Below, in pieces: positions 54,340-62,729 of a stretch of 64,000 bases of DNA. The notes below the pieces were generated by a model. That model had not been told where the DNA came from and did no database searches. It worked only from the letters and a program-made list of their open reading frames with translations. Made by a program: the position numbers and the translations under genes. The stretch comes from Euprymna scolopes (Eukaryota): assembly GCA_053919585.1 (NCBI GenBank), contig CM132809.1. One strand, given 5' to 3'. Position 1 is the first letter of the stretch. Every line of letters starts with the position of its first letter.

Positions 54340-54470
54340 CATGTGCGCACAAAGGTAACTTATAATATGTGTATAATTTACAGACTTATTAATAGCCCTG
54401 TTCTCAATTGAGGACTCTTTAATAATCATGCGGATTTCGTTGGATTTACATCTAGTAAACCAATCAATAC
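54340..54470 (-). mobile_element. Possible Penelope GIY-YIG C-terminal scrap next to (TA)n
   Basis: NEIRMIIKESSIENRAINK resembles the RxIxESxxI...IN terminus. Confidence 0.25.
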
Positions 54471-54476
54471 AAATAC

Positions 54477-54478
<2 letters not shown>

Positions 54479-54541
<63 letters not shown>
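54479..54541. repeat. (TA)n microsatellite
   Basis: Direct reading. Confidence 0.97.

Positions 54542-54544
<3 letters not shown>

Positions 54545-56000: not shown

Positions 56001-56062
<62 letters not shown>
56001..56062. repeat. (CT)n(CA)n compound microsatellite
   Basis: Direct reading. Confidence 0.97.
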
Positions 56063-56065
<3 letters not shown>

Positions 56066-56539
56066 TGAATTATTAATCTATTTTTCAATTTTTTTTCATA
56101 ATTATTCAATTGTGAAAAACAAACTATGTCATCGTGTAAAGTAATATTATTTGTGGAGTAGTTTTCTAATAACACATTGTTAGTTTTAAAGCAAGAACAG
56201 TATTTTAACAACTATACATAAATGGAAACACACCTGGATTTATATTACCTTTCCTAGATATATATAGTAAGGTAATAGAAACTGGTATTTAGAGGCGATC
56301 TGCTCTAAAACAACTAGTTTCCAGTTTCGTGATTTTAACAACAGTAATATAACTCTCTAATACAGATTCAATAAAAAAAACAATGCTTAGAATACTCAAA
56401 ATAAGACGTAGGTATTCAGCTTTTTTACCAACCACGTATTGTTGCAGTATACGAAACGTATACAGGCATATAGTAATACACTATTGCATATATTTGCAGA
56501 GTGAAATATAAATATATCCAATGGGGAAACCTGTTCTTT

Positions 56540-59500
56540 AACTAGATATAGACCCTGAAGAGCCAGTAGGGATTCGAGAAAAATGGCCGAAGGCATTAAC
56601 CGGGCAAATATAGAAAGAGGTGCGAAAGTCTGGGTTAAAGCCGGAACTCGTGTTCACAAAACGCGTTGGTAAAGTACGTCAACCAAAAGAAAATTGTGAT
56701 TGCATCCAGCAAGGGTGATTCTGCCCCACTAGTGAAAAGGAGTGCTCGCCTTTCTCTAGGACCATATGACAGTAGAACACGTTGCTTATTTTTTGGAACT
56801 ATTACTAGGAAAAAGACTCAAAACAAAAAAGTGACGAAAAGAGTATTTATGTGAATATAATTGAATTTGTTCCAACTGTAATAGTCCATTTCAAAACCAA
56901 AGGTGGATGAGTAGGGCAATTCTCTTTAAAGTTGGCTTTAATATTTCAGTTGTGACCTTCGGGAAGGGCACTGTGTTTACTACAAGTCATGTATTGTTAA
57001 CATCTGTATAATGCGAAATATTCCAGGACAATTCCCGTCAGCTGAATCCACCAAACTACGTAAAAGTGGAAGACCAATGGACAGGGATCAGGATGAGGTA
57101 TTCGAGTCTGTTTGTGCCATTCGAGAGAAAAAACACGAAGAACAGCTTACAATATCGGCCCTTACCACTATTATGATAGAATACTTGCATCGTAGTAAAT
57201 CCACGGCGCAGAGAAATCAGCTGCTATGTCTATATAGAAGCTTTATACCCGTGAGTGACGGTCGTAGTTGCGTCAACAACTTTATTGCTATTTAGGGAAC
57301 CCCTCTGGCATTCCTCGTGAATACAAATATTCATTTCAAGTGAATAATAAAAAGCACAGAACAAGCAATTCTCCAAAACGCAGCTACACTTATCAAAATG
57401 TATGTTAAGACAACAATTAAATCAGTGGTGGATATGTATCCAACAACTGTAGTACTGAAACGAGCACCGGCATTAGATTTTATTCCAGCCAGTTTTCGCT
57501 TCTTTTTGCAACATTTGTTTGCTGGGACAAAAAAGGTCCAGAAAAATTGCTGGCATCGGGCAAGCAGTCGTTCCAGCAGTGTGCCAAGAACTGATATGAT
57601 GCCTCTACTGATTGGTGTCCTGTTGCAAATGCACAACATATAGATGACAATTATTGATTGATAGTCTTAAAACCTTAGTAGTTTCCTCATTATATCAAGT
57701 GGTAATTTTTTTTAATTGAACGCAACATTCTCACTTGCCCCGGACGTGTAACGCGGTGACATGTACATTCTTGGCCACTCCCTGTTGTTTGCAGTGAATC
57801 ATAACATTAAACATTGAATCGAAAGCGCGCCTTCCATGGAATGGGAATGATCGCATCCATCACCCCAAAAAAGCAAGTAAGTCATAGTATATCACGACAA
57901 AAATGTCCGACCTTTAACTTGTCGTAAAGGTGAAGATCTATATTAAAGATCATCGCTTTTTAAAGCATATCAACCGTTGCTTAGAATTTCTGTAAGTTCC
58001 ATGCACACCTGCTATCTGTGATCGCAATCTGGATATTATTTGGCAATGTATTCTCACTTCAAACTGACTACATCCAGTAAGGAAGGCATGATTGCATCTG
58101 CTACATAATGACTACAAATATCCGGGACAATATTCGTTATAATTTCTTCCAATGATAAACATGAACCTAGGAGATAAAACATGTATCCTGTCTACACTAG
58201 ATTACCTATGCAGTCTATCCGCAAAACACAACCTGTCAACTATTATATCTTTTGATCAACCGCTATTTTGGAAAGCATCTTAAGTAGTGATCGCTTTTAC
58301 AGATATTATTTAAATAAGGAATGTGATACTGTTGCTTGGCATTTTCCATACCTTTCATTGGTGTACTGAGTGCCATTCAGATTTTGATCGATGACATTGG
58401 ACTCAGGAAAATTATAGAGATAATGCTGCCGTACACATGATGAGCGGAAAAGCTATAAAGTGAGCATTTCGTTGCCAGCTGCTATTACATCAGTGCCTTA
58501 CCCAACCCAGAAGTATATCAAAAGTTCCCCTCCTGATGTTATGCAATCCAATACGTGGCTGCTCTTGGATCAGATCTTGTGATCGAGCAAGCGCTAATGT
58601 GCTCACTCAAAATCCAAGGCAGTGAGACACGAGCGAGTAGAATGTCATAGCACCAGAGAACAGTCATCGACTCAGTAATCTTTCTAAAACCTTGACGTGC
58701 AAGATCTTACCGAATCAAGTTATGCATCAAATCTAAACCAAAAGGAGTATTCTGTCTCTCAGTTAAAATGAGATGAGATAGATCTAGGAGAAGTTGCAGA
58801 AAAACAGAAACGTGTTACACCGTTTTCTGCTAAGGCATAGCTACGCAAAATCAGCACAGGAATTCATGGCAACGATGACGTCAATATACAGGACGACTAT
58901 TAAAATTGGAAGAGACATTGTTAAAAATGAACGGATAATCAGCCTTTTCATACTATCACAAACGGAGTCTGAATGCAAAAAAAAAACGAGCATCCAGCAA
59001 CAACGTGAAGTATCTGAAGATCGTTGCATCGACCCAGCACTCATGTATCAGGAGGTTCTCGTAGTCTCTCAGATGAGAACAAACGACAAACGACAACTTT
59101 CCGAAGCGATAAGAAAATATATCAAAGCAAAATCGGACAGTGCCTTGCAGCAAACCCTATCAGTTACAGAGCGCAGCATACTAGACGGAGGATCTCTTCT
59201 ACATGAAATGAAAGGAAGGTAGCACCAACAGTTCGACTGCAAACGAAGGTACTTCATTAACTCTCAAAAACTATGGAACGACGACTGTGATGTATGATTG
59301 TTATTGTGTTGGACCACACATACACCACTGTGCGCATCAGAGGTAAAGTCGACGGTTGAATGTAAAGAAGGTAAACATTACTGGGGGGAATATTTTCTGG
59401 GTAATATGACCATCTTTCGTTGAATGGAGCAAAGGAGAATGTGTATATGCAATTGGTCATGGAACGAATGAAGCAGACACGATATAATTTTATTTAAACA

Positions 59501-60290
59501 TGAGCAGAAGCTGACATTGAGTTGTAAAAACAACCATCAGTATGTCTGCAATCAGACCGACAAGCGTTATTAAAGAATACGCATATTGTTTTCTTCTCTG
59601 CCTGTTTCATACAGATTTTTCAAAATATAGTGCACTCTATTTTGGATCTGACATGTTAACAATCCTACGTCTATAATCGTAAGGTTCTCAAACAGGTATT
59701 TGGTGAAGCTGTGGTCACTGTCCTATTGTTTCTGTATGCCTTTACAGGATGTGATACGGTGTCCAGAATGTTCGGCATTGGAAAAGAACTTGAGGTTAAA
59801 ACTAATCATCAAAGGATAACAATACTGACAGACTGCTCCAAAGCGTTCTATCAACGAAAGTTAACGCAGGATGTATTGGGTAGCAATGGGTCTAAGGCAA
59901 TGAGGGCACTACTCAATGGAGATCCGAAGGACTGACTGGCGTCGATTTGATACAATATGCTATGCAAAAAGATTTCACGGGCAAAAATGTTCGTCACGAT
60001 ATAACGACATACTTTAAACGCTTCTGTCTGTAAATTTCATTCTCTGCAGACCTACTACCAGCTTATGGAGTGGATTGAATGTAGTGATGAAATGGCAACA
60101 TCTGCGCCCGGATGGGACGTAGTAAGAGAAAAACTTATTCCAGTAAAGACAGACAAAATCCTGCTCCTGATGAACTGATTCAGATGATTCGGTGCAACTG
60201 TTTGCCCTAATGTATACCTGACGAAAGCATGGACTAGAATATACAAGTGCAAGATAGTAACTGTGACAATGTAAAAAGTGCCCCAGTCTT
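56540..60290 (+). mobile_element. Decayed large transposon-like ORF: FDQPL/LGxFH region + FEN1/XPG-like PIN motifs + C-terminal CXC
   Basis: Intronless, colinear plus-strand motifs across frameshifts: GINRANIERG..VH, RCLFFG, DLREGHCVYYKSC, SGRP, FHGMGMIASITP (57832), FLPMIN..DKTCILSTL, FDQPLFWKA (58251), LLGIFH (58335), HMMSGKA (58434), SDLVIEQALM (58570), DGGSLLH (59184), VMYDCY, AEADI, FTGCDTVSRMFGIGK (59747), FHSLQTYYQ..W, PAPDELIQMIRCNC (60187), RKHGLEYT. Confidence 0.75.
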
Positions 60291-62729
60291 AGGTTATGAG
60301 GATGAGGAGAAAAAAGTGTAAACATCTTTAATAGTACATTATGTGTGGGGTATGGGCATCCATAGATATGGAATAAGTGATGATTCAACATCATTGGCAA
60401 TCCTTTCAGGTGACAGAATTATCGTCGAAACATAGATAAAATGCAACATTTATCGGGTTATCCTCAAAACTGGCCGTGTTAGAGAGTTAAAACGTAATGG
60501 AAAATAACTCGTAAAAAAATATTCAACTTCCAAATTATAATTCTCCCGATGCTCACATCTTGTCCAACTTTTAGTATGATGTATAGTCGACGCAACCTGA
60601 CAAAAAACTGCAAGAAAAACTAATTCTTACATCATTTTTAATATGTTTTCGTATTTTGGCTGGGCTAATACGAGCCAATGTATAAGGCACTTACTGATAG
60701 TCAAACTAAGTGGCGAATGCAATATATAATATATAATATATAATATATAAACATACGAACATATGTATAAAATATGAAATATGTAAACATACCAAAATAT
60801 GTACAAAAGAAATTAAAAGGAACTAAAACAAGCGCAATATATAAGAAGATCTGATTATATTAAAAAACTACTTGGCATATAAAAATATCAAAATACTTAA
60901 ACAATTATTTGTCAAATATACCCGAATAAATAAAGTGCGAGGAGAAATTTTGTGCATGCCACCAGCGAAACGGACAGATCGATTAATAAATATAACTCGT
61001 TTAGTGTTTCTGTAATAGTGTGCATTACTATTTGACATCAGTTACAATTTTGAATCCCCAACAAAATCTAAAAAAAATGGGAAATGTAATTATTTTTTAA
61101 ATTTATGATTATTTCATAATTCATATTAAACGCATATCACAAAGAAAATTGTTTAATAAATTGCATTCACACAAGTTTACTAAGATCTTCTTCGAGCTTA
61201 GTTTAATAGAATATACAGTTATATCTAAACTTTATTGGATCGGAATTTACGCTCTATATATGCATTTTTTGTGAAGTGATTTAAAATAATTTCCAAACCT
61301 TAAAATCCGGCGCATATTCTTGTTGTTATAATTTTATAACTAACGACTTACATGTAGTAAAATTTGCTACTAATTATGAAATCAGTATATTTAATACAAT
61401 GCATGCTAATTTTGTTTAGCTACAAAAATATTTTAATAATGACAGAGATACTCAATATCTATGCGAATATAAAGCAGTCTTATATTAGTAATATAATAGT
61501 GTTATTTACTACTTAAAATAGTTATTGGATAGTAATAACATTGCATAACTGTTTTCTCCAAACGGCGTAGTATAATTACCCCTAGAAAGTTTTTTTTTTC
61601 CAGATCAAAATATACATGGATATAACAGAACTAAGATGTAAAAGAAAACATGAGACTTACATTTTGGAGACAAGTTCACGCTGAGTTCACGCGGCAGCTG
61701 AACACGTTTAATTAAACGTGAGTCTGTTGCGGATGACGTCATTTAGAAATGATGACTACACTCTTGTGCTTATAAAGAAAAAGAGTATTCGCACACATAT
61801 CAGAATAAACTGACTACACAAGTAATGCTTGGAATTAGATTAGATTGTATATTTTTATCCGCGTATAGAAACATTTTAGCCACATCAATAATATACTTTT
61901 TAAGAGGATGTTTGCAGTATTATAATAAGGGTTTCTACTAGTGTCAGATAACATTTGCAAAATACATTGTTCGAGCTATTATTTTGTTAAATGAACAGTA
62001 CCATGCTCTGGGATGTAGACACTATTAAATATTAGTCATTATGTGAGAATTAGACTGAGTTTTTTTATGCCTCTCCATGTCTATCGAATTAAACACAACA
62101 ATGAACGTAACATGAAATAAAATATTACATATCAATACGGATACATCCCTCGATAAAACATTACATTCAAAATATTCAATTACAATTTAACTGAAGTATA
62201 CTATAAAAAAAAACATGATTAAGTCTGAAAATATAAGATCCCCATATCCTCGTTTACAAGATAAATAATAATATGAGTGTATAAAATATAACGAGTAAAG
62301 GTATACGCGTATGAATCACTAAATGAACTGCGATTGAGTTGTGACCTGTGTATGGTTTTGAAATAATATATAAGAAAGAAATCCATGCTGTGAAATAGAG
62401 ATCTAAATCAGTATTTACTTAGCAATATTAAATTTATATCAATTACACCGTTTCGATGTATTGTCCAATTTATTATTACTATTGTGATTATGAAATTTTG
62501 AAGTAACACTTTTACATATAACATATGGAATTCTTTATCTCGAATTATAGCAATGCATACATTCATTTTTCTACGTGAAAAATTATCACCGAAACTTAGG
62601 ACAAATCAAACATATAATTATTGCAGGAGGAATCGTGGTAAACATGAAGGTATCTTAATCAACGCTAAATAGAAGGAGAATTTATCAATACCCTTTTTGC
62701 TAATAGAGTGATCGCGTAAAGAGAAAACA

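What the first reader, a model, noticed from the sequence alone, without database searches (positions are those of the whole stretch)
56540..60290. Large unclassified transposon-like protein coupling an FDQPL/LGxFH domain, a FEN1/XPG-like nuclease motif set and a CXC zinc domain
Seen: about 3.8 kb of intronless plus-strand coding debris with ordered motifs, from N-terminal Cys/His clusters through FHGMGMI, FDQPL, LGxFH, HMMSGKA, SDLVIEQ, DGGxLLH..VxDxY..ADI..GCDT..FGIGK to a terminal RCNC..K.GL.. CXC. Established: the D..D..DAD..DxD..GCD..GIG pattern is the acidic active-site and H3TH signature of FEN1/XPG/asteroid-type PIN nucleases. From memory, similar multi-copy proteins in invertebrate genomes are usually annotated only as uncharacterised or Tesmin/TSO1-like CXC. 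Inference: lack of introns, decay by frameshifts and internal deletion, and the TE-rich context point to a mobile element. A putative RNase-H-like transposase half fused to a flap-endonuclease-like half fits none of the common DDE superfamilies that I can recognise here. This is the best candidate for an undescribed system in the window.
Basis: partly seen in the sequence, partly recalled or inferred. Interest (0 to 1): 0.8.

Follow-up and report, generated by a model that had tools for sequence, protein, structure and literature searches.

The report
Dead copy of Academ DNA transposon
This stretch is a broken, end-truncated copy of an Academ-type DNA transposon, a jumping-gene superfamily described in 2010 whose large protein joins a transposase to a DNA-repair-type nuclease, so it is real but not an undescribed system.

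Summary

It is one decayed copy (window 56399-60667) of a very abundant repeat of this 5.9-Gb genome. The copy lacks its 5' inverted repeat. It has at least 7 frame changes, at least 25 stops and a ~350-bp internal deletion.

Intact relatives in public data are 1,411-1,538 aa. They have N-terminal CxxC..HxxC clusters and a DDE RNase-H-like transposase core. The core model is nearest to P element transposase (Z 11.2). Next comes an EXO1/FEN1/XPG-type 5' nuclease (Z 16; all seven acidic residues, the Lys/Arg pair and the helix-turn-helix motif are invariant), then a 9-Cys CXC module.

The claim that it is unclassified fails. A published, curated bivalve repeat library holds a consensus labelled DNA/Academ-1. 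It has the same termini (TAGTCCAGTC...GACTGGACTA) and encodes the same motifs. Copies here have 240-300-bp inverted repeats and 3-bp target duplications, as reported for the nuclease-encoding Academ lineage (AcademX).

Other first-reader notes of this scan already name Academ elements elsewhere in this genome.

How the nuclease serves transposition is untested. I infer that it cuts the 5' strand.

The parts
56399..60667 (+). Whole decayed Academ copy (4,269 bp). It is 5'-truncated and its 3' terminus is intact. GC is 39% against 31% in the flanks.
   Evidence: Limits of homology to 29 other genomic copies. 3' terminus located. GC.
56586..57640 (+). Remnant of the N-terminal region (aligns to P0004 aa ~30-383): degraded CxxC..HxxC clusters (CLFF 56783-56794, VYYKSC 56975-56992) and the helical lead-in to the core.
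   Evidence: tblastn of P0004 and P0002. Invariant Cys/His columns in alignment A2.
57790..58499 (+). First part of the DDE core. The ADNVDHN site (first Asp) is destroyed and reads SES*H* at 57790-57810. It is followed by FHGMGMI 57832-57852, FDQPL 58251-58265 (second Asp), LGIFH 58335-58349 and HMMSGKA 58434-58454.
   Evidence: Invariant D436/D439, D587 and H618 in A2. Strand/helix positions in model m0531b5f391aa.
58500..58503 (+). Breakpoint of an internal deletion of about 350 bp, which removes about 125 aa of the helical insertion domain (P0004 aa 672-797).
   Evidence: other copies carry extra DNA between query positions 1962 and 1964.
58504..58665 (+). End of the DDE core, with SDLVIEQ 58570-58590 (catalytic Glu, E828 of P0004).
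   Evidence: Invariant W818, D824, I827, E828 and Q829.
58688..60157 (+). Linker and XPG/FEN1-type 5' nuclease remnant: DGGSLLH 59184-59204, YDCY 59293-59304 (FDGY), EADIE 59507-59521 (DAD), GCDT 59747-59758 and FGIGK 59771-59785 (helix-turn-helix motif). The DTD motif is lost.
   Evidence: Profile A3 against PDB sequences: EXO1 at E 7.5e-6 with the motifs aligned. Fold matches.
60160..60290 (+). Remnant of the C-terminal 9-Cys CXC zinc module (RCNC 60190-60201).
   Evidence: Invariant or near-invariant Cys columns 1399-1431 in A2/A3. Sub-threshold Pfam preSET_CXC and TCR hits.
60354..60667 (+). 3' terminal inverted repeat, ending ...TTTTGGCTGGGCTA. The family terminus is ...TTGACTGGACTA.
   Evidence: This stretch matches, in inverted orientation, the region upstream of the coding part in 20 other copies. 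Within-copy repeats are 200-260 bp at 78-86% identity.
60668..60670 (.). ATA, the 3' flank where one copy of a 3-bp target-site duplication would lie. It cannot be confirmed here because the 5' end is missing.

Best explanation
The stretch is a dead, 5'-truncated copy of an autonomous Academ DNA transposon. It belongs to the nuclease-encoding lineage, called AcademX in Repbase usage and Academ-1 in RepeatMasker labels.

Shown:
- The family's single long ORF (about 1,450 aa when intact) encodes N-terminal Cys/His clusters.
- Next comes a DDE RNase-H-like transposase with a large helical insertion domain between the second Asp and the Glu. Its putative triad is D436 or D439, D587 and E828 (P0004 numbering).
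- Next comes an XPG/Rad2-family 5' nuclease with a complete active site, then a CXC zinc module.
- The elements carry 240-300-bp terminal inverted repeats starting TAGTCCAGTC and make 3-bp target duplications.

Inferred mechanism:
- The zinc modules and the inverted repeats position the protein on both ends.
- The DDE core nicks the 3' ends and later joins them to target DNA 3 bp apart.
- The fused structure-specific 5' nuclease cuts the other (5') strand at the single-strand/duplex junction created at each end. It would play the part that TnsA plays in Tn7, or that hairpin formation plays in hAT and RAG.

The window copy can do none of this. Its first Asp motif and its DTD motif are destroyed, part of the insertion domain is deleted, and it has no 5' repeat.
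For: Classification:
- Read codon by codon, it encodes MEQCIIC, ADNVDHN..TFHGMGII, ITFDQPLYWKA, LGGFH, DLIIEQVLMRS, VIDGGSLIQR, VFDGY, ADADVLIV, EDTDLLVL, TGCDTTSRLYGIGK and CGCK..RRCNCRRHGLEC.
- The family here has the termini TAGTCCAGTCAA...TTGACTGGACTA.
- Repbase treats matching terminal positions 1-11 plus the same target-duplication length as a superfamily criterion for non-autonomous elements.
- AcademX is reported to encode a nuclease and to make 3-4-bp duplications.
- Both-ended copies here show TAA/TAA, ATT/ATT, a possible ATAT/ATAT, and GAT/AAT.

Nuclease half:
- Profile A3 hits EXO1 at E 7.5e-6 with FDG, the K..R pair, DAD, DTD, GCD and GIGK aligned.
- Foldseek probability is 1.00 to FEN1, EXO1, Rad2 and XPG.
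- VIA-align Z is 16.0 to EXO1 (254 aa aligned, rmsd 3.9) and 15.2 to FEN1.

Core:
- The model has pLDDT 87.9.
- Its best structural match is P element transposase (Z 11.2, 369 aa, rmsd 5.2), then Transib 7.7, Hermes 7.5 and RAG1 7.0.

Abundance and decay.
Against: - I could not run a computed alignment against Repbase or Dfam Academ reference proteins. The match to the curated consensus rests on termini found by text search and on my own codon-by-codon reading of a printed sequence.
- Pfam gives nothing above threshold. DUF6589, XPG_I and the CXC families are all sub-threshold.
- The target-duplication evidence is four old copies in AT-rich DNA, and the window copy itself cannot be tested.
- The key Academ papers (Kojima 2020; Yuan & Wessler 2011) are not held in the library. 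The statements about AcademX are therefore second-hand, from PMC10045372.
- The role proposed for the nuclease is inference only.
- In FEN1 and EXO1 the chain starts at the nuclease domain: the structural alignment begins at chain residue 2. Here about 1,000 residues precede the domain, so its chemistry may differ in detail.
Confidence: 0.9

Rival explanations
1. The element belongs to an undescribed transposon superfamily. Its resemblance to Academ would be superficial.
For: No Pfam family reaches threshold on any piece or any full-length relative. AlphaFold DB relatives are all unnamed. Foldseek finds no PDB match at E <= 0.001 for the core.
Against: A published curated consensus labelled Academ-1 has identical termini and the same ordered motif series through all domains. 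The nuclease content and the 3-bp duplications fit what is reported for AcademX. The curated bivalve Academ mean length of 5,565 bp fits a 1,450-aa ORF plus the repeats.
Confidence: 0.03
2. It is Academ, but the XPG-type nuclease does not take part in excision. It works after strand transfer, trimming 5' flaps or overhangs at the gapped integration or donor site, that is, a repair helper carried by the element.
For: The nearest structures are EXO1 and FEN1, enzymes of flap removal and resection. The Lys/Arg pair that positions the 5' phosphate is conserved. The sister lineage AcademH carries a helicase instead and makes longer duplications (9-10 bp against 3-4 bp). The citing paper links that difference to the accessory enzyme, which points to a role at the target-joining or repair step.
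Against: Host FEN1 and EXO1 are already available for such repair, so strict conservation of a fused copy across 16-18 diverged full-length relatives (30-40% identical to P0004) suggests an element-specific step. There is no experiment either way.
Confidence: 0.3
3. It is a member or offshoot of the P element superfamily that captured a host XPG-family nuclease.
For: P element transposase is the best structural match for the core (Z 11.2, well above the next group at about 7.7). The spacing from the second Asp to the Glu (241 aa) is long, as expected for a core with a large insertion domain.
Against: Sequence identity in that alignment is 11%. There is no Pfam Tnp_P_element or THAP hit. Duplications are 3 bp, whereas P elements make 8 bp (my own knowledge). 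The termini and motifs equal a curated Academ consensus. Repbase lists Academ and P as separate superfamilies.
Confidence: 0.03
4. It is a decayed paralogue of a domesticated host gene, not a transposon.
For: Some relatives in gene catalogues carry host-like names, for example 'Protection of telomeres protein 1' and 'C2H2-type domain-containing protein'.
Against: There are thousands of candidates in this genome. All 29 fetched copies are broken in different ways. Shared termini, long inverted repeats and target duplications are present.
Confidence: 0.01

Closest known systems
Academ superfamily, nuclease-encoding lineage (AcademX; 'DNA/Academ-1' in RepeatMasker-style libraries). Example: Academ_A.kagoshimensis_2 in the curated bivalve library of PMC10294476.
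   Same: Same terminal sequence (TAGTCCAGTC...GACTGGACTA). Same ordered motifs from the N-terminal CIxC through DNVDHN, TFHGMG, TFDQPL, LGGFH, IEQ, DGG, FDGY, DAD, DTD, GCDT and GIGK to the CXC. One long ORF. 3-bp duplications, within the reported 3-4 bp.
   Different: A different, older family in another genome. Window pieces are about 25-48% identical in protein to the nearest intact database relatives. The window copy is truncated, deleted and full of stops.
AcademH (helicase-encoding Academ lineage; Kojima 2020, cited in PMC10045372 and PMC10799480)
   Same: By the cited accounts it is in the same superfamily with a related transposase. The weak DUF6589 signal may be this kinship, but I did not test that.
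   Different: It carries a helicase instead of the XPG-type nuclease and makes 9-10-bp duplications. No helicase is present here.
Drosophila P element transposase (PDB 6p5a, 6pe2)
   Same: Best structural match of the core: an RNase-H-like DDE fold split by a large insertion domain (Z 11.2, 369 residues, rmsd 5.2).
   Different: Only 11% identity. No THAP domain was found. No fused nuclease or CXC is known for P elements. The target duplication length and the termini differ.
Human EXO1 and FEN1 (XPG/Rad2 family 5' nucleases; PDB 5v0a, 8yjl)
   Same: Same fold (Z 16.0 and 15.2). All seven acidic residues, the Lys/Arg pair and the helix-turn-helix motif are conserved.
   Different: About 15% identity. 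The domain sits after about 1,000 residues of another enzyme rather than at the chain start. It is followed by a CXC zinc module instead of PCNA- or MMR-binding tails. Pfam XPG_N and XPG_I do not reach threshold.
Tn7 TnsA/TnsB (a separate 5'-end nuclease working with a DDE transposase)
   Same: Functional analogy only: a DDE enzyme for the 3' ends paired with a second nuclease that could cut the 5' strand. For Academ this is inference.
   Different: TnsA is a restriction-enzyme-like protein, a separate polypeptide, and bacterial. There is no homology.

Membership tests
Academ superfamily (AcademX / Academ-1) | Transposase homologous to reference Academ transposases | tested here: met
   The curated Academ-1 consensus encodes ADNVDHN..TFHGMGII, ITFDQPLYWKA, LGGFH and DLIIEQVLMRS, the invariant motifs of alignment A2/A4. 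Caveat: I read the printed consensus codon by codon. No computed alignment to Repbase or Dfam was possible.
Academ superfamily (AcademX / Academ-1) | Encodes an XPG-type nuclease in addition to the transposase | tested here: met
   EXO1 profile hit at E 7.5e-6. Foldseek probability 1.00. Z 16.0. The nuclease is in the same ORF in 16 or more full-length relatives. PMC10045372 states that AcademX encodes a nuclease.
Academ superfamily (AcademX / Academ-1) | Terminal inverted repeats with termini shared with classified members (Repbase rule: positions 1-11) | tested here: met
   5' TAGTCCAGTCAAT and 3' ...TTGACTGGACTA in many copies, against TAGTCCAGTCATT...GACTGGACTA in the curated consensus. 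Repeats are 200-260 bp aligned at 78-86% identity. The window copy keeps only the 3' one.
Academ superfamily (AcademX / Academ-1) | Target-site duplication of 3-4 bp | tested here: met
   Four both-ended copies: TAA/TAA (L015+L018), ATT/ATT (L029), possibly ATAT/ATAT (L002), and GAT/AAT (L017). The sample is small, old and AT-rich. It cannot be tested on the window copy.
XPG/Rad2/FEN1 5' nuclease family | Seven metal-binding carboxylates plus the Lys/Arg pair and the helix-turn-helix DNA-binding motif | tested here: met
   Invariant D1055, D1095, D1166, D1168, D1190, D1192, D1252, K1104 and R1111 (A3 numbering), plus the invariant GCD..S and the Lys (K1262) of the GxGK motif. They align to the EXO1 motifs.
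XPG/Rad2/FEN1 5' nuclease family | Pfam XPG_N / XPG_I at gathering score | tested here: not met
   Only 1 of 18 members touches XPG_I, at E 0.066. There are no hits for the window pieces. This is a divergent member by sequence but clear by fold.
P element superfamily | Tnp_P_element/THAP domains and 8-bp duplications | tested here: not met
   No such Pfam hits. Duplications are 3 bp. Only a fold resemblance exists.
KDZ / Zisupton transposons (CxC-cluster associated) | KDZ transposase domain | tested here: not met
   No KDZ or CxC1-6 Pfam hit on six full-length relatives or on the 30 core segments. The CXC here resembles the Tesmin and preSET type, and only below threshold.
Tesmin/TSO1 CXC domain | 9-Cys CXC pattern recognised by Pfam TCR or preSET_CXC | tested here: inconclusive
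   The Cys pattern C-x-C-x3-C-x4-C-x-C-x6-C-x3-C-x2-C-x4-C is invariant or nearly so. Pfam E-values are only 0.011-0.044. The model is unconfident there (pLDDT below 50).
Pfam DUF6589 | Match at gathering score (27 bits) | tested here: not met
   10 of 30 members hit at E 1e-4 to 0.1, best about 18 bits, covering profile positions 136-404. A distant relation is possible.

The most novel reading that the evidence does not exclude
Academ may be a eukaryotic cut-and-paste transposon that solves second-strand cleavage with a fused, dedicated structure-specific 5' nuclease, as Tn7 does with TnsA. Its DDE core would belong structurally to the insertion-domain group, nearest to P element, followed by Transib/RAG1 and hAT. 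As far as I could find, neither point has been tested experimentally and no Academ structure exists.
Probability: 0.35. Interest if true: 0.55.

Novelty: already known. Interest (0 to 1): 0.15.

Why it matters
For this window it matters little: the stretch is one dead copy of a classified repeat and should simply be masked as DNA/Academ.

Two points are of wider use:
- Gene catalogues in many animal phyla carry these proteins as 'uncharacterized' or 'Tesmin/TSO1-like CXC'. No Pfam model catches them, so they are easily mistaken for novel host genes.
- Academ is a little-studied superfamily. Confident models of both enzymatic halves now give a testable division of labour between a P-element-like DDE core and an EXO1/FEN1-like nuclease with a complete active site.

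Tried and rejected
- **Pfam on window and genomic pieces.** Eight window pieces and five longer ORF pieces from other copies gave nothing. A single-sequence PDB search was also blank.
- **More genomic copies.** Ends were therefore defined from the 30 loci already held.
- **Inverted repeats inside the window.** The search found none for this element. The reason is that the 5' repeat is missing, not that the family lacks repeats.
- **Frame-corrected consensus.** Natural intact relatives from the protein library served for profiles and folds instead.
- **Literature.** Kojima 2020 (PMC7165386) and Yuan & Wessler 2011 (PMC3093488) are not held. The supplement of PMC5751038 is not held. Majorek 2014 does not mention Academ. 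Searches on DUF6589 were uninformative.
- **Foldseek on the core.** Foldseek alone gave only weak rows (E 0.009 or worse). The relation to transposases became clear only with VIA-align.
- **Readings considered and rejected.** P element member, KDZ/Zisupton member, and domesticated host gene (see the rival explanations and the membership table).
- **Repeat signal at 54.4-54.6 kb.** The apparent high-copy match is only a (TA)n microsatellite.
Full report
**1. What is in the window**

Six-frame reading of 56.3-60.6 kb shows no ORF above 144 aa on the + strand. G+C is 39% inside the stretch against 31% in the flanks.

An intact 1,445-aa relative from the protein library (P0004) aligns colinearly from aa 59 to 1435. 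The alignment comes in eight pieces that switch frame at least seven times and contain at least 25 stops. P0004 residues 672-797 have no counterpart. The junction is at window 58500-58503, where other genomic copies carry about 350 bp more.

**2. It is a repeat with defined ends**

- The stretch finds 108 scored pieces (485 candidates) elsewhere in this 5.9-Gb genome at 67-83% identity.
- A protein search with P0004 finds 3,998 first-look candidates. Several of these belong to less decayed lineages with open frames above 1,400 aa.
- None of the 29 fetched copies of this particular subfamily is intact; the longest frame is 457 aa.
- Homology between copies runs from window 56399 to about 60667.
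- The last ~310 bp (60354-60667) match, in inverted orientation, the DNA that precedes the coding part in 20 other copies. Full elements therefore carry long terminal inverted repeats. Within a copy these are 200-260 aligned bp at 78-86% identity.
- The termini are 5' TAGTCCAGTCAA... and ...TTGACTGGACTA 3'.
- The window copy ends ...GGCTGGGCTA at 60667. It lacks roughly 430-470 bp at the 5' end, including the whole 5' repeat.
- Four copies with both ends show flanking TAA/TAA, ATT/ATT, possibly ATAT/ATAT, and GAT/AAT. That indicates a 3-bp (perhaps 3-4-bp) target-site duplication, on a small and old sample.

**3. The protein**

A profile of five natural ORF pieces (A1) finds 4,952 clusters at E <= 0.001 among 1.84 billion representative proteins. 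The full-length members are 1,411-1,538 aa. Alignment of 16 of them (A2) shows four modules.

| Module | P0004 residues | Key features |
|---|---|---|
| N-terminal clusters | ~1-280 | Two CxxC...HxxC clusters, then a helical segment |
| DDE core | ~280-975 | ADNVDHN (D436, D439), TFHGMG, TFDQPL (D587), LGxFH, W..G..D..IEQ (E828) |
| 5' nuclease | ~1030-1370 | DGG (D1055), FDGY (D1095), K1104, R1111, DAD (1166/1168), DTD (1190/1192), GCD (1252), GxGK |
| CXC module | 1399-1431 | Nine-Cys pattern |

The core model is confident (pLDDT 87.9, pTM 0.87). It places the first Asp motif on a strand, the second just after a strand, and the Glu on a helix that follows a long all-helical insertion. That is the layout of DDE transposases with an insertion domain. 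Foldseek alone is weak. VIA-align gives P element transposase at Z 11.2 (369 residues, rmsd 5.2), ahead of Transib (7.7), Hermes (7.5), RAG1 (7.0) and ISCth4 (6.6).

The C-terminal model (pLDDT 81.5) matches EXO1 (Z 16.0, 254 residues, rmsd 3.9), FEN1 (15.2), XPG (12.8) and GEN1 (11.7). The sequence profile alone reaches EXO1 at E 7.5e-6 with the catalytic motifs in register.

Pfam reports only sub-threshold DUF6589, XPG_I, TCR and preSET_CXC.

**4. What it is called**

A DDE transposase plus an XPG-type nuclease suggested Academ to me from memory. The primary papers are not in the library. Held papers give the following:
- Academ is a Repbase superfamily of DDD/E transposons.
- Its AcademX lineage encodes a nuclease and makes 3-4-bp duplications, while AcademH encodes a helicase and makes 9-10-bp duplications.
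- Curated bivalve Academ consensuses average 5,565 bp.

The decisive test came from the supplement of that bivalve paper (PMC10294476). [quoted passage not shown] Read codon by codon, its ORF encodes MEQCIIC, ADNVDHN..TFHGMGII, ITFDQPLYWKA, LGGFH, DLIIEQVLMRS, VIDGGSLIQR, VFDGY, ADADVLIV, EDTDLLVL, TGCDTTSRLYGIGK and CGCK..RRCNCRRHGLEC. Both the termini and the whole motif series are those of the family in this window.

The element is therefore an Academ (AcademX/Academ-1) transposon. The caveat is that this comparison was made by text search and by eye, not by a computed alignment to Repbase or Dfam.

**5. How it most likely works**

Shown: two complete active sites are conserved in one polypeptide across relatives only 30-40% identical to P0004. 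Long inverted repeats and 3-bp duplications are also shown.

Inferred:
- The DDE core nicks and later transfers the 3' ends with a 3-bp stagger.
- The fused 5' nuclease cleaves the complementary strand at the junction formed at each end. This would be a built-in second-strand nuclease, analogous to TnsA of Tn7.
- The zinc modules bind DNA.

The main rival is a post-integration or donor-repair role (flap trimming). That rival fits the EXO1/FEN1 resemblance, and it fits the link the literature draws between the accessory enzyme and the duplication length. Neither role has been tested.

One difference from cellular FEN1 and EXO1 is worth noting. In those enzymes the chain starts at the nuclease domain (the structural alignment begins at chain residue 2). 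Here the domain is internal.

**6. The window copy**

It is non-functional:
- The first Asp motif reads SES*H*.
- The DTD motif is lost.
- About 125 residues of the insertion domain are deleted.
- The 5' repeat is absent.

**7. Verdict**

This is a real feature that was correctly observed, with its domains correctly recognised, but it is already classified. Three first-reader notes of this scan on other pieces of the same genome also speak of Academ elements. I did not check those loci. Interest is low for the locus. There is modest general interest in the untested mechanism of the superfamily.

Noticed in passing
own genome, e.g. matches listed (not fetched): Besides the old subfamily of this window (copies 67-83% identical, all broken), the genome holds less decayed Academ lineages. 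Some matches have open frames of 1,436-1,475 aa with few or no stops. About 4,000 first-look candidates suggest that Academ is a major repeat class in this 5.9-Gb genome.
   Followed up: partly
supplement 12 of PMC10294476, entry Academ_A.kagoshimensis_1: A second curated 'Academ-1' consensus starts TAGCCCAAG and encodes a clearly different protein, with motifs such as FGPFHIMLAYFG and TLEQTINAD. The label therefore covers at least two divergent lineages with related LGxFH-like and IEQ-like motifs.
   Followed up: no
alignment A4, Pfam DUF6589 (Atlas row 2): The segment from after the second Asp to the Glu hits DUF6589 below threshold in 10 of 30 members. DUF6589 may be the transposase domain of a related (possibly AcademH-type) element family. 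This was not tested.
   Followed up: no
window 54470-54542 and about 56040-56110: Two simple repeats: a (TA)n microsatellite and a (CA)n/(GT)n plus (GA)n-type repeat just upstream of the truncated 5' end. The first produced spurious many-copy BLAST matches.
   Followed up: yes
L024:382-1185:+ and L026:89-1126:-: Next to other copies of the element lie two unrelated features. One is a 268-aa open frame with reverse-transcriptase-like motifs (YADD), likely a LINE. The other is a ~1-kb tandem array that reads as FIYIFCIISY repeats, a satellite.
   Followed up: no
window 2193-53518: Eight runs of N (134-222 bases each) lie in the window, none inside the element.
   Followed up: no
AlphaFold DB cluster hits: Two Academ-core relatives are named 'Protection of telomeres protein 1' and one 'C2H2-type domain-containing protein'. 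These are probably annotation carried over from fused or mis-merged gene models.
   Followed up: no
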